NCBI GenBank assembly: GCA_964247055.1 | Contig: OZ176050.1 | Coordinates: 14,260,001-14,324,000, forward strand | Reading direction: 5' to 3' | DNA: 64,000 nt | Source: Paragordius varius | Lineage: Eukaryota; Animalia; Nematomorpha | In this document: positions 3,010 to 57,534 of the stretch, one piece after another | Layout of the letters: each line of letters starts with the position of its first letter | Position numbering within the stretch: position 1 is the stretch's first letter | Program-made: the position numbers and the translations under genes | The notes under the pieces: model-generated | Seen by the model: the letters and a program-made list of their open reading frames with translations, nothing else | Database searches by the model: none | What the model was told of the DNA's origin: nothing

Positions 3010-5189
3010 TCAATCATCAAGAATGACTTTCCATATATCACTCATCTTTTGTCCCTCCTCTCGGTTAAAGTTGTTTCCTTTGAGAATCTCTAATGATTCC
3101 CGCGTAAGCCTTTGATTATTATTGAAAATTGTAATGCAACTGACATTGTCAAAGGAAACATTATGATTTTCCTTCCAACAATGTTCCGCAATACAACTCT
3201 TAAAATCTCCATTCTTTATGTTATACTTGTGTTCATTCAGGCGTGTTTTAACTTTCCTTGCGGTTTGGCCGATATATACCCTGCCACACTCGCATGGAAC
3301 TTTATACACCCCTGGATAATTTAATTTGGATTTATTATTATTTGATAAAAAAGTTTTTAATTTAAGACCTGGTTTAAACCCCACACCAATGTCAAATTGC
3401 TTTAAAGTGTGAGCTATGCGATCGGTGATGTTCTGTATATATGGTAATGAAATAAAAAACTTATAATTTTTTGTGTTTTCTTTGGTATTATTTAGTGATA
3501 AAATTGCTCGATGGATATCGTTTGCAGAATATCCATTTTTTAAAAAGGTTTCCACAAAACGCTCTGTTATAATATTCTTATTTGCATTATCTGTCAGTTT
3601 AAGCCGGCGAAAGATTTGATTTTTTAAAACATTCTTTTTTTGTAACGAGTTGTGGTAAGAACTTTTATGTAAATAGGTATTGGAATGAGTGGGTTTTTGA
3701 TAAAAACTGTATGACAATGTTGTGTCATTTCGAGTAATTAAAACATCTAAAAATGGTAGTGATCGGTTAGCCTCAAATTCGACGGTTAAACGTATGTTAA
3801 AAGGATTCGAATTTATATAATCTAAAAATAAGGAGAGATCAGTTCTTGTATGTGGCCAAATGATAAACATATCGTCCACATACCGGGTATAAAATTTTGG
3901 TTTTAAAAAATAATTTAATATAAATTGATTTTCAAATGTTTCCATAAAAAGATCAGCTAGAATGGGGGAAATTGGGGAACCCATCGGTAACCCGTCTTTC
4001 TGCAAGTAAAAATTATCATTGAATTCAAAAAAATATTATTTATACAAAATTCAATCAGGGAAATATATTTCGCATCCACCTTTAAATCTTTAAGAAGATG
4101 GGTTAACTCCTTGAGGGGTACACTGGTAAAGAGGCTTTCCACATCTAAACTTATTAATAAATCGGTTTCAGCTACTTGTATATCCCTTATTCTATCTATA
4201 AATTCAAACGAATTTTTTAATTTGTTTTTTAAGAAGGGTTGCAAATATTCTGATAAATGCTGTGCCAAACCATATAAAGATGAATTTTTGGTGGATACAA
4301 TTGGACGCAGTGGAACATCCGTTTTATGCGTTTTTGGGACACCATACATACTGGGATTAATAGGGCACTGAGGAATTAACGAATTGTGTAAATGTGAGGG
4401 AATGGGAGATGATTTTATCATTTTTTTAACATTTATGTGTAATGTGTTAAAAGGGCATCGTGTGATCTTTTTATATTTGGATGTATCTTCTAAAATATGT
4501 TGCATTTTTTGATTATAGTCTAACAAGTTCATTATAACTACTTGGTTTCCTTTGTCAGAGTTTGAAATAAAAATATCATTATTATTTTTCAACTCTTTTA
4601 ATGCTATATATTGTTCACGTGATATGTTTGATCGCCTTCTTTCATCTTTGTTGTTCTTAAGGATAGATACGACTTGCATTCTGATGATGTCAGCTATTTT
4701 TGGATCTATACGAGAGAGACCTGCTTCAACGTTTGAAATAATTTGTTCTACTGGCACAACTGAGGGAGAAATAGCAAATTTTAGGCCTTTATTTAAAATT
4801 GAGCTCATATGGTCATTAAGCACCATGTTTGACATGTTTACGATCAGGTTTTCGTTGTTATTATTAACTTTGTTTGTCACTTGATTTGTTTTTATTGATT
4901 CATGTAAATTATTTTTATTGATGGGGTTTTTTTCTTTATTGTTATTTCCTTCAATGTAGTATTTTGAGCAGGTAGGTTGGTCATCTATAGAAAGGTGTTT
5001 AAACTGTTCGTGAAGTGTTTTAGACATCAATACGTCTGTTTCTTTTTTATCTAAATGAGTAGGTTCCAATTTTATGTCATTATTATACGACTTTTGGTTG
5101 TTTTTAATTTTGTTAACATTTAGGGTATCTAACCGTTTTTTAACATTAGCTATTAATCTCTCTTCATTTCTAACTTTATTGTTTCTTTC
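3010..5189 (-). CDS. Penelope RT-GIY-YIG polyprotein, interrupted by a single 1-nt frameshift at about 4027-4033
   Basis: PLE RT motifs YGVPKTHK..PLRPIVS, LDVESLFTSVP, QKDGLPMGSPISP, YVDD; endonuclease GVYKVPCECGRVYIGQT...RLNEH. The frame is open up to the inversion junction at 5189. Adding one T to the T7 run restores NNIFFEFNDNFYLQKDG. Confidence 0.9.
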
Positions 5190-5769
5190 TTATGCAAATA
5201 AGAATATTATAACAGAGCGTTTTGTGGAAACCTTTTTAAAAAATGGATATTCTGCAAACGATATCCATCGAGCAATTTTATCACTAAATAATACCAAAGA
5301 AAACACAAAAAATTATAAGTTTTTTATTTCATTACCATATATACAGAACATCACCGATCGCATAGCTCACACTTTAAAGCAATTTGACATTGGTGTGGGG
5401 TTTAAACCAGGTCTTAAATTAAAAACTTTTTTATCAAATAATAATAAATCCAAATTAAATTATCCAGGGGTGTATAAAGTTCCATGCGAGTGTGGCAGGG
5501 TATATATCGGCCAAACCGCAAGGAAAGTTAAAACACGCCTGAATGAACACAAGTATAACATAAAGAATGGAGATTTTAAGAGTTGTATTGCGGAACATTG
5601 TTGGAAGGAAAATCATAATGTTTCCTTTGACAATGTCAGTTGCATTACAATTTTCAATAATAATCAAAGGCTTACGCGGGAATCATTAGAGATTCTCAAA
5701 GGAAACAACTTTAACCGAGAGGAGGGACAAAAGATGAGTGATATATGGAAAGTCATTCTTGATGATTGA
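5074..5769 (+). CDS. Chimeric ORF: antisense-derived N-terminus fused in frame to the duplicated Penelope C-terminal/GIY-YIG domain
   Basis: From ANKNIITERF to VILDD the translation is identical to the C-terminus of ORF 3010..4005. The N-terminal ~40 aa come from the opposite strand of the 5' ORF region. Expression is unknown. Confidence 0.5.
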   Translation: MSLLYDFWLFLILLTFRVSNRFLTLAINLSSFLTLLFLSYANKNIITERFVETFLKNGYSANDIHRAILSLNNTKENTKNYKFFISLPYIQNITDRIAHTLKQFDIGVGFKPGLKLKTFLSNNNKSKLNYPGVYKVPCECGRVYIGQTARKVKTRLNEHKYNIKNGDFKSCIAEHCWKENHNVSFDNVSCITIFNNNQRLTRESLEILKGNNFNREEGQKMSDIWKVILDD

Positions 5770-31872: not shown

Positions 31873-34800
31873 GTGAAAATATTTCAACCAACCAAAAATA
31901 CCTTTTTAGCCCGATTCGATTTTTTCAGAGCGGAACGATTAGCGGGTGAAGGATTCTTGGGATTTTTTATAAGACTCAAAAATATAGCCGGCTCATGCGA
32001 GTTCAAAGGGAACGTTGACGAACTAATACGGGACGTATTTATATGTGGATTGAAAAAAAACTAGAGACCGAACTACTTAACAGGTACCCAAGGGCATTAG
32101 ACAACGACACGCCAGTGGGATTAAATAAGGTTCCAAATTTGGCATTAGCGTATGAAAATTCTCGCCTGGAAGTGAACTCAGTGAAAGCGATTAATAATAA
32201 TGATAATATAGAAAGTAATAATAATGATAATAATAATGAAAGTTATAATGATGGTAATATTAAAATGAGAGACAAAATGAAATATATCTGGTTAGACGCA
32301 AATCTAGCGTAAAATAGTGTTTCAAATGCGGTCACACCCACAAATACGGATGCTGCCCAGCTTTTGGGAAGGAATGCTTCAAATGTCACGGTAGAAATTG
32401 GCAGCCAATGCCAAAACAAATATGCCAGCAATAACAGGTATGTGAATAATATATTAAACAAACCTAAAATAAATGTAAAAATAAACTCAACCCACGTCGA
32501 AATGTTATTCGAAACGGGGGCCGACATATCGTTAATAAATTTTAGCATGTGGTTTAAGATAGGGAAGCCCAAAATAAAACCCAATGAAAAATTTTAATTA
32601 ATAACCCAGAAAACTTATATATTTTTTCATTTCCTGTCAAAATCTTATTAATATCCATAATTATTTTAAGAATAATAAAGATATACGGTTTCTCAAAAAT
32701 TAAAAGTTGATATCGATTTAAAATTATGTTAAAAAACAATAAAATAGATGAATTATACGATTTGATTGATAAAAGTTAAAAACGAATCAAAAAAATTAAG
32801 GGACCAACTTGAAGTGTTCGACCAACTTGAAATGTTCAAGGACCAACTTAAACTGTTTAAGGACCAACTTGAAGTGTTCAAGGAGACTCTTGAAGTGCCA
32901 ATGGTATACCCAAATTTGATGATTTGATTTCCAAAATTTCACATGGTAAGACGTTTTTAACATTAGATTTAGAAGATGCGCTTATCTTCAGATTCCAGTG
33001 CAACCGGAATCTCAAAATCTTCTCACAAAATCCACACCTCTTGCGTTTTTTAAATATACTAGGCTCCCTTTTGGTTTGTCGTGTGCACCTAGTATTTTCC
33101 GACAGATCATGGATGAGCTATTAGGAGATTGTAAGGGAACAGCGGTCTATTTAGATGATGTAATTGTTACGGGGGAAACGGATGAGGAGCATTATAGAAA
33201 CCTATTTGAAAGATTAGAACGAATGGGTCTTATATTAAAAAAATAAATTAAAGCTTTTTCAACAGGAAGTAGAATATTTGGGGTTTATCAGAAAAAAATA
33301 TAAAACCAGCGAGCAGTAAGATTAAGACCATTCGCGAGTGTCCAGCCCCTAAAGATAAAACAAGTCTCCGATCGTTTTGGCCTTTTAAACTTTCATTCAC
33401 GATTTATACCTTCACTAAATATAATTGTCAACGAACTTCATCAGCTAGCTGGTTCCAAAAAGAAATGGTGTTGGACAGATGTACATTAAAATATTTTGAA
33501 AGGGCCATGTTGTTAATAGGGAATAACAGCCGTCTCTTTCCTTTTAACCCAAGACTTCCCCTTATATTAGAACAGATGCATCTTGGAAGGGGTTCGGGGC
33601 CATCCTCTCGCACAAGACGTCGGAATTTAAACGACCCATTGCATATTTTTTAAAAAAATGTTTTCCATATTCGGTTATAGAAAAAGAGGCAAAAGCCATT
33701 GTATTAACCCTAGTAAAATTTAAAACGCTTTTATATGGTAGAAAATACGATATTAGAACAGACCATAAACCTCTTATCAAATTATACGGGCAGCAACGTG
33801 TATTAAGCGAGCACAATAGTAAATTGCTAAGATGGATTTCAAAAACATCCATTTTCGACTTCAACATAATGTACTACCCGGGAACCGAAAATTTAGCATC
33901 ACTATCAAGACTACCAACTGAGATAACTGAAGAGTGTACAATGACGAGGATATAGCGCAGGAGGTCCGGTTGCTATGGTGTCAGGAGTTAAACTTAAACA
34001 AGGAGTGGGTGCTTAAGGAAACTATGAGCGATGAGGTGTGTAAACAGATTAAAGCAGCACGAAAGACTAATGATTGGTCTCATCCGGGGGTGCAGTCCCA
34101 TAAACCACTGAGAAATGATATCGAAGAATCATACGGCCTTCTATATCTAGGCGACCGTCTTATTGTTCCACAAAGCATGAGGGTCGATGTTCTTAACTAT
34201 CTTCATAAAGGTCACCCTGTGATACAGTCCATGAAAGCGTTAGGTAAGACTGGTGTGTTTTGGCCCAAATTAAACCAGGATATCCAAAAATGGGTGCAGG
34301 GATGTTTAAGTTGTCAAAAGTCACGGTTCAACATTGCAGTGAGCCCGACTTATAAATGGAACCCGAACACCACCGTTTGGGAGCGATTGGATATAGCGGG
34401 GCCCGTAGATAACATCTACTGGGTCATACTTATAGATCACTGCACCCGTTGGGTAGAAGTGGCACAGCTTAAAACAGTAAACTCGATCAGTATTTTGAAA
34501 GTTTTAGAAATTAGGTTTGCACGAAATGGAACCCTAGAGATGACTGTAACAGAGAATGCGTCGTACTTTAAGTCCGGTGATTTTGAAATAATATTAAGTT
34601 CCTCTAATATCAAGCATGTAACCTTTGCGCCATACCACCCTCGGACAAATGGTTTAGTGGAAAGGGTCATTCAAACATTGAAAACGCACTATTATATGTG
34701 TAATTCTGAAGTAGCAGATCCAGAACGCCGGTTAAACCAGGTACTGTGGGCTTACAGGTCAACACATCACAATGGTATAAATGAGACACCTGCAGGACTA

Positions 34801-35034
34801 TTTTTAAAACGCAATTTACCGACACCGCTGTCCTGGATGAAAGTAAAACCAAAGAATTATATTGATGATGGCACCTCAGATAGTACACGTGAGTTCGTTC
34901 CAGGTGAGAAAGTATTTATAAAGAAAGAGTTAGAAGCCGGTTGGAGAGAGGGAAAAGTAGTAGAGCGGACTGGATTATTGTCCTACAATATCGAAGGTAA
35001 GGGAGGGTTTTATGAAAGCATACTGATCAATTAA
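31873..35034 (+). pseudogene. Gypsy gag-pol remnants: gag ~31873-32300, protease ~32480-32590, RT ~32924-33300, RNase H ~33540-33870, integrase 33934-35034
   Basis: LIRDVFICGL; MLFETGADISLI; YTRLPFGL..AP..F...YLDD; TDAS..GFGAILS; LHKGHP..CLSC, LDIAGP, LIDHCTRWVEV, PYHPRTNGLVER. Confidence 0.9.
32590..32910. mobile_element. Fragment of the foldback-like family F between Gypsy PR and RT
   Basis: Reverse complement of ~36640-36915; includes 21-bp repeats AGGACCAACTTGAAGTGTTCA. Confidence 0.7.
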
Positions 35035-47070: not shown

Positions 47071-47642
47071 CATTATTATTCTGTATTACATTAAAAGCTT
47101 AAATATTTTATTTTGTGTGCTAGAGTCTAATGGAAGACTTTTAAAAAAATAAATAACTAGTTTAGTTGATAATTATTATGTTTGTTTTGGTGATGTTCAG
47201 CCTAAAAGCTTATACATTAACATTTTGCAACCATAACATACTATTTAATTGCATATTGTATCAGCGCTTTAAAAAATTTTAAAACCTGAGAGCTGCGGCT
47301 AAAAAGTTTGATATTGAGTCTTAATCGCTTTAAGATATAAAACTACCCTAAACATGAAGTGTCACAACCAAAAATTAATAAAAATGCTGTCAAATCAAAA
47401 AATATATTTTGTAAAAATAAAGATACCATTTAATATATTATATGAATGATTATGCCTGAGCATAGAGTGGATTATATTTTGGCCATCATAGATAATTTTA
47501 CAATAAAACTAAAAATTATACTTAATATAATATTTTTTTTACTAGTAATCAAAAATTATTATATTCAATGATATCAATAATATTATTTCAATAAGTAATC
47601 TGGTCGGCTGTTTTATGATATGGTGAAATTTACATGTGTATC

Positions 47643-49688
47643 ATGAAATCAAATTTAATTGAGGAAAAAGTAGTACATGTTTTTATATGTCATTTTAGGT
47701 CTTAGCACCATACTGTTATATATCTGAGCTTCCGGGTAAAAATTTAAGACAAAAACTCGCAAATGTATGAAAATCGTAATATATACTAGGCTTTTAATTT
47801 CTGGCTTCAAATACCCATTGAAAAAATGATGGAAATTTTAAACATTATTCAAATGTTACATAACGCTAGTTTGCTGTAATCTTTAATTAAATTTTAGCAT
47901 TGATGATATTGAAGACAATTCGTGTTTGCGAAGGGGCCAACCAGTTGCTCATCTTATTTACGGTCAGCCGTTAACCATAAACGCAGCTAATACAATTTAC
48001 TTTTTAGCGCTCGAAAAAGTTTTGGAGTTAAATCAACCAAAAGCAGTAGAAATATTTACATGTATATTAATAATTTGTATTAATGTAATTTAATATTTTG
48101 ATTTTGAGTCAGTTTTTTTAAATGAAAACCAAATTAATATAAAATGTAATAAATATCTATAATATCGGAGGATATAATTTCGATACAGTAAATTTTTGCT
48201 AATATTTACTAAATTATCCTAAAAATCCCTTAACTATAATTATATAATTGTAAAAATATAAAATTTAAGTTTTGATTAGCGAGCTGTTTTTTTCTTATTT
48301 TAGCCATCGAAAAGACAAATATTTTACATATATTTTACGGGATTATATTATCATTATGAAAAATTTTGTTATGAAATACCAATTAAATGCCAAATAATTT
48401 AATAAAAATTTCATATCGACTTTTTTTTCGCAACTACTTGTATATAGGTTTATGAAATATTTTTTTAGCAGAACTAATTGAATTACATAAAGGGCAAGGA
48501 TTAGACATATATTGGCGAGATTCACACAACTGTCCAACGGAAAATCAATATTTTGATATGGTCGCAAAAAGTACTACACTTTCATCTTTGCTTTGTTTTT
48601 ATAAGGAATTAAAAAATGACCTTGTTTTTTCTTCTCAAAAAGAAAATATTTTGTCTTTTTAGATTACATAATAATTATTAAAATAAAACAATTAACTTTT
48701 TTGAATTAAAATAAATATGGCTTCTTTTGGTTAAATGTAAACAAGTTACAGTAAATATTGAAATTATACGGACAAAACGTAAAAATATAAAGACAAATTT
48801 TTTAGTTTTAAAAGATTACCCCTTACTTTTACAAACCTTAATTTATCCTATTATAATCTTTTAATAGCAACCGTTATATAATTGACTGTGTTACCAATAT
48901 ACATCTCTGTTTTATACTTTAGTGTTTAAAACAGAGATCAAAAAAAATAAAATTTTGAAAGTATGATTGTTGTCTTTTGAGAAAAAAATATTTGTCTTTA
49001 TATTTATACGTTTAGTCCCGTATAATTTCAATTTACTGTAAAATTCTAATTTTGAATTATAAGGGATTAACTGGATCCATGAAGTGTAAAATATTTGCTG
49101 AATTAAATAAGTTTAGACAATTGCTTATGTAATTTTATGACAACAATTTTATAAATTTCTGAATAAATTTGTTTAAAACGAAAACGAAATGTTTTAAATA
49201 TCTCTTCTCACTAATTTCAGCATTTTAAGTGTAAAAATTTTTTAAATATTAAATTAAAATAGAAAAAAGCATGTTTTTTATTTCCATTAATTAAAGTTTA
49301 GTAGAATGTTATATAAATTTTTTCACTTTATAAACCATTTAATTAATTATATATTTTACAATTGTTATTAATTTTAATAGGATAAATTAAGGTTTAAAAA
49401 AGTAAGGTTGTCTTTGAAAAAAAATTGGTGTTATATTTTTGCGTTTTGTATGTATAATATCAATTTTTACTGTTATTTTAAAATATTTTTTTTGAGGGCA
49501 GAAATACGTAGGTTGTCCTAAGGCTTTCTATAAATGTATTATATAATACTAAGACAAAACAACTAATGACTAATATTTTTTACTGTAAAGATTATATATT
49601 TTTTTATTTTATTCTCTACATATAAATATATATAACTGATAATGTGTTATATATAATTTGTATATGGATTAGCATGTTAATCATAGAT

Positions 49689-49719
<31 letters not shown>

Positions 49720-52518
49720 AAAATCGGCATATATTACAGTAAAAATTAAAATAATACGGACAAAACGTAAAATTATAAAGACAAATATTTTTTCCAAACG
49801 ACAATTATAATTTTTAAATCTTGATTTGTAAAGTATAACTCATTGTTTGAAACGGTAAATTGTGTTATAGAAATGTATATTACTAACACAATCAAATACA
49901 ATAACAATAATAATTAAATAGCTTAGGGAAACATTAGGGTTTTAAAGTTTAATTGTATTTTTTAAAAAAATATTTGTCTTTAAACGTTTTGTCTGTATAA
50001 TTTCAATTTTTAATGTAATTTTTCTTGATATCTTTGTATATTTAAAAATATTTAATTTTTTACATTACGCTTTAACTCTCCTTATAATTTTAAAATTTAC
50101 TCTATAAATACAGTATAGTATACGGACAAAACGTGAAAATATACAGACAAATATTTTCATCTAATTTTTAAAATCGTTTCTCATATAAGCTACTTAGTTA
50201 CAATTGTATAATATAGAATTGATTGTGTTAGTATTATATCTCTCTATTTCACACTAATGCCATTTAAAACAATGTAGATTGAAATAAATCCAGAATTAAA
50301 AAGTATGGTTGGTTGTCTTTTTGAAAAAAATATTTGTCTTTATATTTTTACGTTTTGTCTCTCAGTATAATTTCAATTTTACTCTTTAAATTTAATTAAT
50401 CCCGTTTTTTTGGTAAATTTTTAGAAACTGGTGGTCTTTTCCGATTAGCCTTTAAACTTATGGCTTTGTACAGCAAACGCGAATTCAATCAATCCAAATA
50501 CATAGATTTGTTGAATGACTTGTCAATATATTTTCAAATTAACGATGACTATGCAAATCTAATATCCTCAAAAGTTTTTTTTTCAAAAATCCTTAAACTC
50601 TTAAGCTTTTTTTAAAGCGTATTGTTGATTGAACTTTTTTGACAGTAGCCTTAAACTTTATTTAAACCGTTGTCGGGACATATTGTATTTATTTGTTATA
50701 TTTTGGCAAACAAAATTATTGAATTAATTTTTTTTCTTTTATTTTACCTGATAGCTCGAGAAATTTTTTTAAATCATTACTAGAGAGCAACTATATACAA
50801 TAAAAATTGAAATTATACGGGACAAAATCTCTTTTTATCAAAAGACAATTTTTTTTTCAAAAGATAACCCATACATACTTTTTTAAACCTTAATTTATCC
50901 TCTAAAAATCATTAAATACATAATTGATGGTGTTACCAATTCACATTCCTCCTTTTTATACTTTGGAGTTAAATAAATGAGTTATAAGGTTTAAAAAAAG
51001 ATCAAGATTTAAAAAGTATCGTTGCACCCCTTTTAAATAAAATATTTGTCCGTATACAATTTCAATCATTTTTCACTGTATAAAATGCATTTAAGTAATG
51101 GCTAATTTTATTACACTACCATATACTACTAATAAACTTTAACAGTACCATGAAAATAAATCATTTTGCGAGGATTTGAGTGAAGGAAAATATTCGTATC
51201 CCATTATTCACATGTTGAGACAACAAACATCCTCAAACAGTAATAATGAAAAATCCCACCAAAAAGATTTGATTCAAAATGTCCTTAAACAGCGGACGAC
51301 AGATCAAACTGTTAAAGCTTATTGCTTACAAATACTCAAAGATAATAGCACATTTACCCACACTCTTGCCATCCTTAATGAATACGAGGATAGGTAGGAT
51401 ATTAAAATTTTTTTAAAAGTCGAAACTCATTATAAAACCATTAAAAATGTTAAGTATAAAATAGAAAAGATTTTCATTATTTAATACATTTGACTTATTT
51501 ATATTTACTGTTTTTTTTACATTTCTTTTCCAATGCAACACTCATAAATTATGTTATTTCACAATGTGCCGGTTATTTTTGATGAAAGGCTAACTAAATT
51601 ATTTTGGTTGTAGGATCATTTAACTGGAAATGGTGGGTAAATAATGCTGCTAAACAATCTTTTAAAACTAATATTTATATAATAAACTCTTTAATATTAA
51701 ATTTATTGATGCATAAGTTATAATTAGTATGTCATTAATTTTAAAGCGATTTGCATTGAAACAGCTCAATATGGGCTTTTCTCCAAGGCAGGGGCCGTTT
51801 AACAAAAATAAAAAAAACGGTGGTTTGCGTTTCAAAAATGCATAAGCTTTTATAAATATTTTATTTGATTTAGACAAAGGGTGCTGTATTTCACCAATAT
51901 TTTCTAATTTGTTGCCAAAATTTGTTAAAATATAAATAGAAAAATTGTTGTAATAATAATAATATAATTACCAAGATTTTATGAATCATTTTTGGTTTTA
52001 TAAGGTATGTTTTCAAATTTTTGCCAGCCGCACCGTATGTTATTGGACGGCCTCATTTTGAATACTCTTGATCGTAAGTTTTAATATTGGTTGGTTAGTA
52101 TAGTTGATTATTCCTAAGTCGTTAAAGACTTTTTGAATATAGATTTCACTATTGATTTTCACTTCATTCTATCTTTTACCGCTACATTGAGATCGTTTAA
52201 TGTCATCTTAGTCTCATCTTTTATCATATCACCACCTCATCTACCCTTGTTCTTCTACCTTCCCACGGTTTCTCTTAAGAATTCGATTACTTGACATGAC
52301 CAAAATATGTTAACGTTTCTAATTTTAATTAAAAAATATTTATTACGCCTCTCTTATCTATAGAATGTTGTCCTTTATATGAAAATCAATTTGTGAAATT
52401 TTATATTTCTTTCTATCCATTTTTCACACCTAGAATCAATGCGCAAATTGAAGAGTTGGGTGGCAATGATCAGTTATTAGATATCCTGCAAAGCCTTAAA
52501 CACTTACGATCATCCTAA
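47643..52518 (+). CDS. GGPS1: Geranylgeranyl diphosphate synthase (type III, GGPS1/quemao-like); exons 47643-47669, 47699-47764, 47790-47875, 47898-48061, 48469-48570, 50425-50573, 51146-51393, 52434-52518; 927 nt, 308 aa
   Basis: Spliced translation gives [104 protein letters not shown]. All seven introns are GT-AG with consistent phase. Exon 1 is the least certain. Confidence 0.95.
47670..47698 (+). other. 29-nt GT-AG intron (GGPS1 intron 1)
   Basis: GTAGTACATGTTTTTATATGTCATTTTAG. Removal joins MKSNLIEEK to VLAPY; retention frameshifts to TAG. Confidence 0.7.
47765..47789 (+). other. 25-nt GT-AG intron (GGPS1 intron 2)
   Basis: GTATGAAAATCGTAATATATACTAG. Has an in-frame TGA; removal gives the conserved KLAN-AFNFWL. 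Confidence 0.92.
47876..47897 (+). other. 22-nt GT-AG intron (GGPS1 intron 3)
   Basis: GTAATCTTTAATTAAATTTTAG. Has an in-frame TAA; removal rebuilds the CTC codon within HNASLLIDDIED. Confidence 0.95.
48749..49038. mobile_element. MITE-A copy in GGPS1 intron 5; further intronic copies 49737-50015, 50111-50384 (intron 5) and 50798-51078 (intron 6); intergenic copies ~25880-26105, 27672-27945, 43259-43517
   Basis: TA-CAGT...ACTG-TA with ~60-bp TIRs matching the family consensus. Confidence 0.88.
52150..52330 (-). pseudogene. RTE-like LINE 3' fragment in GGPS1 intron 7
   Basis: Broken YFGHVK..GKVE..G*MRW..DR motif, typical of RTE C-termini. Confidence 0.55.
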
Positions 52519-52803
52519 TAATCATTTTTGTTGCATTTTACATGTTAATACAATTGGCTTATTAACCATTTACCTGCTCTTATTTTGTGTTGTCGAATTT
52601 TGATTATAACTGAAAGTCAAAAACATCAAATTTTATTATATACTCACCTACAGTTTTGTTACAAAATTATTTTGTATAATATATTGTATCATTATTATTA
52701 TTTAAATAAATTAGGTTTGTATACTTATTTAATCTATATATCTCTTTAATTATATTTGGCACTAATTTTTTGGGTTGGTTATCTTATGTAGATAAATGTA
52801 ATA

Positions 52804-57448: not shown

Positions 57449-57534
57449 CCTTCGATAGCTCAGTTGGTAGAGCGGTGGACTGTAGATGTAAAGCTGTTAT
57501 CCATAGGTCGCTGGTTCAAATCCGGCTCGAAGGA
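57449..57534 (+). tRNA. tRNA-Tyr: tRNA-Tyr(GUA) with a 13-nt intron (57486-57498)
   Basis: CCTTCGATAGCTCAGTTGGTAGAGCGGTGGACTGTAG-[ATGTAAAGCTGTT]-ATCCATAGGTCGCTGGTTCAAATCCGGCTCGAAGGA. 73-nt mature cloverleaf, anticodon 57482-57484, intron after position 37. Confidence 0.97.

What the first reader, a model, noticed from the sequence alone, without database searches (positions are those of the whole stretch)
47643..47897. Three consecutive ultra-short spliceosomal introns (29, 25, 22 nt) in an animal-type GGPPS gene
Seen in sequence: removing three GT-AG segments of 29, 25 and 22 nt gives an open GGPS1 reading frame; the 22-nt intron splits the codon just before the catalytic DDIED motif (HNASLL|IDDIEDNS). 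None is a multiple of 3, and each leads to a stop if retained. Established: minimal introns in insects, nematodes and vertebrates are typically about 40-70 nt or longer; 20-30 nt introns are known mainly from ciliates, microsporidia, nucleomorphs and dicyemids, mostly reduced genomes. Inference: this TE-rich metazoan-like genome has a spliceosome that excises ~22-nt introns, probably by intron definition with a reduced footprint. Standard gene finders would miss or fragment such genes.
Basis: partly seen in the sequence, partly recalled or inferred. Interest (0 to 1): 0.92.

Follow-up and report, generated by a model that had tools for sequence, protein, structure and literature searches.

The report
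Three tiny introns in GGPS1
An intact animal gene for an isoprenoid-building enzyme (GGPS1) starts with three genuine-looking introns of only 29, 25 and 22 bases; this size is published for just two other animal groups, but no RNA data were available to show the cutting directly.

Summary
Removing GT-AG segments 47670-47698 (29 nt), 47765-47789 (25 nt) and 47876-47897 (22 nt) opens the frame. With four longer GT-AG introns (407, 1854, 572 and 1040 nt) this gives an intact 308-aa GGPS1. It aligns end to end with named animal GGPS1 proteins at 50-55% identity and has no gap at any junction.

Three lines of evidence beyond the reading frame say these are real introns:
- Introns 2 and 3 sit at the same codon and phase as introns of 2256 and 866 nt in the nematode Soboliphyme baturini. 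Intron 3 also matches a 474-nt intron in another animal contig.
- A deep DNA run reproduces the assembly and shows a second allele. In it, 8 of 9 exonic differences are synonymous (P about 2e-5), and a 1-nt insertion lies inside intron 2.
- Retaining any one segment gives an early stop.

Splicing itself is not shown, because no RNA run in the index holds this gene.

The organism could not be named from this window. Earlier notes of this scan call this genome a probable horsehair worm and report the same intron class on other pieces of it. The papers I could search report introns under 30 nt in animals only for dicyemids and myxobolid myxozoans. I class this as a new member of a known kind.

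The parts
47643..47669 (+). GGPS1 exon 1 (ATG; MKSNLIEEK). An in-frame ATG also lies at 47634.
   Evidence: Residues 3-9 align with cnidarian and other GGPS1 proteins.
47670..47698 (+). Mini-intron 1: 29 nt, phase 0, GTAGTA...TTTTAG, GC 24%
   Evidence: Soboliphyme has an acceptor one codon upstream of this position.
47699..47764 (+). Exon 2 (22 codons, [22 protein letters not shown])
47765..47789 (+). Mini-intron 2: 25 nt, phase 0, GTATGA...ACTAG. The second allele has 26 nt (+A after 47769) and T>A at 47782.
   Evidence: Same position and phase as a 2256-nt intron in Soboliphyme baturini.
47790..47875 (+). Exon 3 (AFNFWLQ...HNASL + CT of Leu60)
47876..47897 (+). Mini-intron 3: 22 nt, phase 2, GTAATC...TTTTAG, GC 14%
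   Evidence: Same codon and phase as an 866-nt intron in Soboliphyme (L001) and a 474-nt intron in L002.
47898..48061 (+). Exon 4, with the first Asp-rich motif DDIED
   Evidence: Pfam PF00348, E=2.7e-15. Six allelic SNPs, all third-position and synonymous.
48062..48468 (+). Intron 4: 407 nt, phase 1, GT-AG. Depth is at unique-sequence level, with no repeat.
   Evidence: Same position and phase as a roughly 60-nt intron in Soboliphyme.
48469..48570 (+). Exon 5
48571..50424 (+). Intron 5: 1854 nt, phase 1, GT-AG, filled with copies of a high-copy MITE-like element
   Evidence: Position shared with Soboliphyme.
50425..50573 (+). Exon 6, with the second Asp-rich motif DDYAN (residues 189-193)
   Evidence: Two synonymous allelic SNPs.
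50574..51145 (+). Intron 6: 572 nt, phase 0, GT-AG, carries a repeat
51146..51393 (+). Exon 7
51394..52433 (+). Intron 7: 1040 nt, phase 2, GT-AG, carries a repeat
52434..52518 (+). Exon 8 ([27 protein letters not shown], then stop)
   Evidence: tblastn of homologue C-termini, model

Best explanation
The three segments are genuine U2-type (GT-AG) spliceosomal introns that have shrunk to 22-29 nt at ancestral intron positions of a functional GGPS1 gene. The pre-mRNA must lose all three, plus four ordinary introns of 407-1854 nt, to encode the 308-aa enzyme. Shown here: the sequence anatomy, orthology of the intron positions, integrity of the gene, and purifying selection on the spliced frame. 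Inferred: that the ordinary spliceosome removes them by pairing the two ends across the intron. All seven introns share the same simple signals (GTA in 6 of 7 at the 5' end, YAG in 7 of 7 at the 3' end). Each mini-intron has an A about 10-13 nt upstream of its 3' end that could serve as a branch point.
For: - Spliced model: an intact 308-aa ORF with 7 GT-AG introns.
- It aligns without gaps across all three junctions with 11 full-length homologues.
- It aligns end to end (residues 3-307) with GGPS1 of Stylophora, Nematostella and Ylistrum at 54-55% identity.
- Pfam polyprenyl_synt hits tile exons 4-7 in order. DDIED and DDYAN are present.
- Introns 2-6 lie at the same codon and phase as in Soboliphyme baturini GGPS1. 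There the counterparts of mini-introns 2 and 3 are 2256 and 866 nt.
- The position and phase of intron 3 recur in a second animal contig, L002 (474 nt).
- DNA run X1 shows two alleles at about half depth each. Of 9 exonic differences, 8 are synonymous (binomial P=1.7e-5). The only indel near the 5' end is +1 nt inside mini-intron 2.
- Retaining any mini-intron truncates the protein at codon 21, 33 or 61.
- Mini-intron GC is 14-24%, against 33% for the exons.
Against: - No RNA evidence. The two RNA runs with the same species label that I laid on the locus (X6, X7) put nothing on it, and no RNA run in the index holds the gene.
- Intron 1 is matched in Soboliphyme only to within one codon, and it lies in the weakly conserved N-terminus.
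- The SNP list from read laying is truncated (12 differences not shown), so the synonymous ratio rests on the listed subset.
- X1 may be the assembly's own sample.
Confidence: 0.88

Rival explanations
1. This copy is a decaying, untranscribed pseudogene, and the three segments are small frame-breaking insertions that happen to look like introns.
For: No transcript was found. The gene lies in DNA dense with transposable elements, and three of its introns carry repeats.
Against: - The ORF is intact across 8 exons.
- All three segments are exactly GT..AG (chance about 1e-8).
- Two of the three lie exactly at introns of other animals.
- Eight of 9 allelic exonic differences are synonymous.
- Allele depths add up to single-copy depth, so nothing suggests a paralogue.
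Confidence: 0.04
2. Assembly or polishing error: the true introns are longer, or the segments are indel artefacts in AT-rich DNA.
For: The DNA is very AT-rich (about 27% GC) and rich in homopolymers, which invites indel errors.
Against: Short-read-derived contigs of run X1, at depth of about 500-900, reproduce the region. They show only a +1 A allele in intron 2, and no listed joint or gap between 47643 and 47897. Errors would not produce GT..AG ends at conserved intron positions.
Confidence: 0.02
3. The segments are removed, but not by the canonical major spliceosome: for example by germline-to-soma DNA elimination, or by a specialised or altered splicing machinery devoted to a separate micro-intron class.
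For: Intron sizes in this one gene are sharply bimodal: 22-29 nt against 407-1854 nt. The mini-introns cluster at the 5' end. Earlier notes of this scan report the same two-class pattern elsewhere in the genome (unchecked by me).
Against: Mini and long introns share the same GT(A)...YAG ends. Positions and phases are those of ordinary introns in other animals. Introns under 30 nt in myxobolids and Dicyema are read in the literature as compatible with U2-dependent splicing (PMC13644364). No evidence of DNA elimination was seen, since DNA contigs keep the segments.
Confidence: 0.06

Closest known systems
Ultra-short introns of the dicyemid Dicyema japonicum (as summarised in PMC13644364, citing Lu et al. 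2019 and Zverkov et al. 2019)
   Same: Animal GT-AG introns under 30 nt, and a reduced 5' signal of roughly 'GTa'. Here 6 of 7 introns start with GTA.
   Different: In Dicyema nearly the whole intron population is short and the genome is small. Here 22-29-nt introns sit in the same gene as 407-1854-nt introns that carry transposable elements, in a 64-kb window with one evident host gene. Here the 3' ends keep a T-run before AG (TTTTAG twice), whereas Dicyema is reported to keep only AG.
Ultra-short introns of myxobolid myxozoans (Henneguya salminicola, Thelohanellus kitauei, Myxobolus spp.; PMC13644364)
   Same: Median intron of 22-27 bp, conserved intron positions between conserved exons, short introns clustered next to other short introns, and an AT-rich genome (Henneguya 29% GC).
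   Different: Those are fast-evolving, reduced cnidarian parasites, and Iso-Seq reads support their junctions. Here the GGPS1 protein is ordinary (54-55% identical to coral, sea-anemone and scallop GGPS1), and no RNA support exists yet.
Short introns of ciliates (Paramecium, roughly 20-35 nt; Stentor, 15-16 nt) and nucleomorphs (from my own knowledge and the citations in PMC13644364)
   Same: They show that a U2-type spliceosome can physically excise introns of 15-30 nt.
   Different: They are unicellular lineages with a uniform short-intron population, not a bimodal one in an animal.
GGPS1 / type III geranylgeranyl diphosphate synthase of animals and fungi (Pfam PF00348)
   Same: Full-length collinearity, DDIED and DDYAN motifs, and 308 aa against 297-305 aa in named animal orthologues.
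   Different: A 13-residue Ser/Asn-rich insertion in exon 7 (about residues 225-237). Nothing else is unusual in the protein.

Membership tests
Ultra-short (<30 nt) spliceosomal introns of animals | Canonical GT...AG boundaries | tested here: met
   All three, and the four long introns, are GT-AG.
Ultra-short (<30 nt) spliceosomal introns of animals | Length under 30 nt in the real DNA, not only in the assembly | tested here: met
   29, 25 (26 in the second allele) and 22 nt. Contigs of DNA run X1 agree. X1 may not be independent of the assembly.
Ultra-short (<30 nt) spliceosomal introns of animals | Removal is needed, and is sufficient, to restore a conserved reading frame | tested here: met
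   Gap-free alignment across the junctions. Stops at codon 21, 33 or 61 if an intron is retained.
Ultra-short (<30 nt) spliceosomal introns of animals | Located at positions occupied by ordinary introns in orthologues | tested here: met
   Introns 2 and 3 match Soboliphyme baturini exactly (2256 and 866 nt). Intron 3 also matches L002 (474 nt). Intron 1 matches within one codon.
Ultra-short (<30 nt) spliceosomal introns of animals | Spliced junctions seen in RNA | not testable with these tools
   RNA runs X6 and X7 laid nothing on the locus. No RNA run in the index holds the gene. Read laying is capped at one call.
Ultra-short (<30 nt) spliceosomal introns of animals | The host gene is functional (under purifying selection) | tested here: met
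   Eight of 9 listed allelic exonic differences are synonymous, P=1.7e-5. The list is truncated.
GGPS1 (type III GGPP synthase, PF00348) | Polyprenyl synthase domain across the protein | tested here: met
   Exons 4, 5, 6 and 7 hit PF00348 profile positions 58-111, 114-143, 146-194 and 196-250 in order.
GGPS1 (type III GGPP synthase, PF00348) | Two Asp-rich motifs (DDxxD, then DDxxD/N) | tested here: met
   DDIED at 62-66 and DDYAN at 189-193.
GGPS1 (type III GGPP synthase, PF00348) | End-to-end similarity to named GGPS1 orthologues | tested here: met
   54-55% identity over residues 3-307 to Stylophora, Nematostella and Ylistrum GGPS1.
GGPS1 (type III GGPP synthase, PF00348) | GGPP synthase activity | not testable with these tools
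   Needs an enzyme assay.
Nematomorpha (taxon proposed by earlier notes of this scan) | Sequence-level affinity to a named nematomorph | tested here: inconclusive
   No close GGPS1 relative was found; the best is 74% over one exon and 55% over the full length. Only the composition fits: the window has about 27% GC and is repeat-rich, against 26.93% GC and 63.8% repeats published for Gordionus montsenyensis. That paper reports no Penelope elements, while this window has a possible one by eye (one search found only RVT_1).

The most novel reading that the evidence does not exclude
This animal has a large, repeat-rich genome (a probable horsehair worm, according to earlier notes). It keeps a discrete class of 20-30-nt introns concentrated at the 5' ends of genes, beside ordinary and TE-inflated introns. 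If so, extreme intron shrinkage is not tied to genome compaction or a tiny body. The accepted lower limit of about 30-40 nt for bilaterian introns would then reflect which genomes have been sampled and how gene finders are set. Part of the low BUSCO scores and the 'gene loss' reported for this animal group would be an annotation artefact.
Probability: 0.4. Interest if true: 0.8.

Novelty: new member of a known kind. Interest (0 to 1): 0.68.

Why it matters
A Sept 2026 survey of 51 animal genomes (PMC13644364) found introns under 30 nt only in myxobolid myxozoans and one dicyemid, and tentatively linked them to parasitism and reduced size.

Here the same intron size occurs in an ordinary, well-conserved bilaterian-type gene. 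That gene sits in DNA dense with transposable elements and also has kilobase introns. Short length therefore cannot simply be a by-product of genome compaction. It follows that the spliceosome of this animal handles 22-nt and 1.8-kb introns in one transcript.

There is also a practical side. From my own knowledge, common gene finders and some aligners set a minimum intron length near or above these sizes. Genes like this one may therefore be truncated or called missing, which bears on completeness scores and on claims of gene loss for this lineage. I did not test this.

Tried and rejected
- RNA evidence. X1 and X5 proved to be DNA, with even depth over exons and introns. The RNA runs X6 and X7 laid nothing. 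A second run search on exon 7 found no RNA holder.
- Close relatives. The search for homologous proteins with exon 7 found nothing. With the exon-4 ORF the best hit was 74%. With a profile of the exon pieces plus three homologues it returned 120 GGPS1 proteins, none above 55% full-length identity to the model. So no orthologue from a sister species could be compared.
- Naming the organism. A look-up of a window transposable-element ORF and of Nymphon GGPS1 gave no contig. Word searches of the earlier findings gave no independent test.
- Cunha et al. 2023 (the first nematomorph genomes) is not held in the library. The supplements of PMC13644364 are not held either, so I could not check whether a nematomorph was among its 51 genomes.
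- A Pfam sweep of all open segments in the window, to find further host genes with mini-introns, was dropped because it needed a very long list of references in one call. By eye, only transposable-element ORFs exceed 75 aa outside GGPS1.
- Rfam found no snRNA in the window, only a tRNA.
- Rejected ideas. IES-like excision: the boundaries are GT-AG at conserved intron positions, not TA-bounded. Alternative genetic code: no in-frame stop needs reassigning.

Full report
**What is there**

On the + strand, an ATG at 47643 opens a short exon. Three GT-AG segments follow: 29 nt (47670-47698), 25 nt (47765-47789) and 22 nt (47876-47897). Removing them gives one frame that runs into the catalytic DDIED region.

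I extended the model with homologue-guided tblastn and splice-site inspection. It has eight exons: 47643-47669, 47699-47764, 47790-47875, 47898-48061, 48469-48570, 50425-50573, 51146-51393 and 52434-52518. The seven introns are 29, 25, 22, 407, 1854, 572 and 1040 nt, all GT-AG. The product is an uninterrupted 308-aa protein.

Retaining mini-intron 1, 2 or 3 stops translation at codon 21, 33 or 61.

**Gene identity**

- Exons 4-7 hit consecutive parts of Pfam PF00348 (polyprenyl synthase), in order.
- The spliced protein carries DDIED (62-66) and DDYAN (189-193).
- It aligns over residues 3-307 with named GGPS1 of Stylophora pistillata, Nematostella vectensis and the scallop Ylistrum balloti at 54-55% identity, and with many insect GGPS1 proteins at about 50%.
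- The only sizeable gap is a 13-residue Ser/Asn-rich insertion in exon 7.
- An alignment with 11 full-length homologues has no gap at any of the three mini-intron junctions. The exon pieces tile the family alignment end to end.

**Are they introns?** Four independent arguments:

1. *Chance.* GT and AG each occur at about 4% of positions in the window. Three homology-fixed boundaries all being GT..AG has a probability of about 5e-9, or about 3e-8 if 1-2 nt of boundary ambiguity is allowed.
2. *Orthologous positions.* The gene model P0003 lies on NCBI assembly GCA_900618415.1, which PMC7668243 names as the Clade I nematode Soboliphyme baturini.
   - Aligning my protein to that locus shows exons ending and starting at the same residues as mine.
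   - The splice sites show identical position and phase for my introns 2, 3, 4, 5 and 6.
   - The counterparts of mini-introns 2 and 3 are 2256 and 866 nt there.
   - The acceptor corresponding to my intron 1 lies one codon upstream.
   - A second animal contig (L002, a Logan assembly, 34% GC) lacks introns 1 and 2. It has a 474-nt intron at exactly the position and phase of mini-intron 3.
   - Many database ORF fragments also start their homology exactly at residue 61, as expected if this intron position is widespread.
3. *Population evidence.* DNA run X1 covers exons and introns evenly (word depth about 500-900, with spikes only on repeats). It carries a second allele at about half the depth.
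   - Of the nine listed exonic differences, eight are synonymous: six third-position changes in exon 4 and two TTG>CTG changes in exon 6. One is Asn34>Asp.
   - Only 20% of possible changes in this CDS are synonymous, so P=1.7e-5.
   - The same alternative contig carries a 1-nt insertion and a substitution inside mini-intron 2 (25>26 nt), with GT and AG kept. A frame-shifting indel is thus tolerated exactly where the model says the sequence is not translated.
4. *Composition.* The mini-introns have 14-24% GC, like the long introns (19-27%) and unlike the exons (33%).

**What is not shown**

Splicing itself is unseen. The first run search returned five holders (X1-X5) and five RNA runs with the same species label that hold none of the words. 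A second search on exon 7 again found no RNA holder. The claim therefore rests on comparative and population evidence.

**Mechanism (inferred)**

Mini and long introns share the same simple ends: GTA in 6 of 7 and YAG in 7 of 7, and two of the three mini-introns end in TTTTAG. I therefore take them to be substrates of the same U2-type spliceosome, recognised across the intron. Each mini-intron has an A in a U-rich context 10-13 nt from its 3' end (by eye), which could be the branch point. That would leave only about 10-15 nt between the 5' splice site and the branch. This agrees with the description of myxobolid and Dicyema mini-introns in PMC13644364, but it is untested here.

**Context**

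- The window has about 27% GC and is mostly transposable elements. These include an RT-bearing element at 3-5.8 kb and a Gypsy-type pol at 32.9-35 kb.
- Introns 5-7 are inflated by a very high-copy MITE-like element.
- Intron 4 (407 nt) has unique-level depth, so it is an ordinary intron next to a 22-nt one.
- Intron sizes in this gene are therefore sharply bimodal, with the mini-introns in the first 255 nt of the gene. I have no explanation for this 5' clustering.

**Organism**

I could not name it from this window. The closest GGPS1 sequences are only 50-55% identical over the full length. The best over a partial stretch is 63.5% over 159 aa, to the sea spider Nymphon striatum.

Earlier notes of this scan call this genome a probable horsehair worm (Nematomorpha). 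They report the same 20-32-nt intron class in many other genes on other pieces of it, none with RNA proof. The scan has therefore found this before on other DNA of the same genome.

Only indirect support comes from my own work: the published Gordionus montsenyensis assembly has 26.93% GC and 63.8% repeats, and its paper never mentions introns.

**Literature**

PMC13644364 (Mol Biol Evol, Sept 2026) surveyed 51 animal genomes and found introns under 30 bp only in Myxobolidae and Dicyema japonicum. Searches combining Nematomorpha, hairworm or genus names with intron terms found no report. The first nematomorph genome paper is not in the library.

**Verdict**

- The phenomenon is a known kind (ultra-short animal introns) in what appears to be an unreported lineage and an unusual genomic setting.
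- Confidence that these are bona fide excised introns: 0.88.
- Interest: 0.68.

Noticed in passing
window 48743-49034, 49365-49523, 49716-50408, 50796-50918: At least five copies or fragments of one MITE-like element with terminal inverted repeats of about 50 nt fill introns 5 and 6. Logan word depth there reaches 1e5 to 3e6, against about 500-900 on unique DNA. That points to thousands of copies in the genome.
   Followed up: partly
window 57449-57534 (+): A tRNA-Tyr (GTA) gene of 86 nt (Rfam 61.5 bits; ARAGORN). The length suggests it has a tRNA intron.
   Followed up: partly
window 3013-5189 (-) and 5059-5766 (+): An RT-bearing retroelement (Pfam RVT_1) whose C-terminal part of about 190 aa is repeated in inverted orientation next to it. 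By eye the tail has a GIY-YIG-like motif, so it may be Penelope-like, but Pfam did not confirm this. The Gordionus genome paper reports no Penelope elements.
   Followed up: partly
window 32950-35031 (+): The pol of a Gypsy-type LTR retrotransposon (RVT_1, RT_RNaseH, Integrase_H2C2/rve), with an open integrase ORF of 366 aa.
   Followed up: partly
runs X5, X11, X12: DNA runs labelled as three other organisms, from other 2024 studies, hold 10-40% of the sampled words of this gene. X5 lays identical low-depth (2-4x) DNA contigs on it. This could be carry-over between libraries, infected hosts or mislabelling.
   Followed up: no
L001 3001-24363 (Soboliphyme baturini, UZAM01007464.1): The deposited 1038-aa gene model joins PRP39-like HAT repeats and an RRM domain to GGPS1. 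It looks like two neighbouring genes fused by the annotation.
   Followed up: no
window 47500-47552 and 52601-52661: The second allele in X1 differs from the assembly at about 4% of positions in flanking non-coding DNA as well. Heterozygosity is therefore very high, or the sample was pooled.
   Followed up: no
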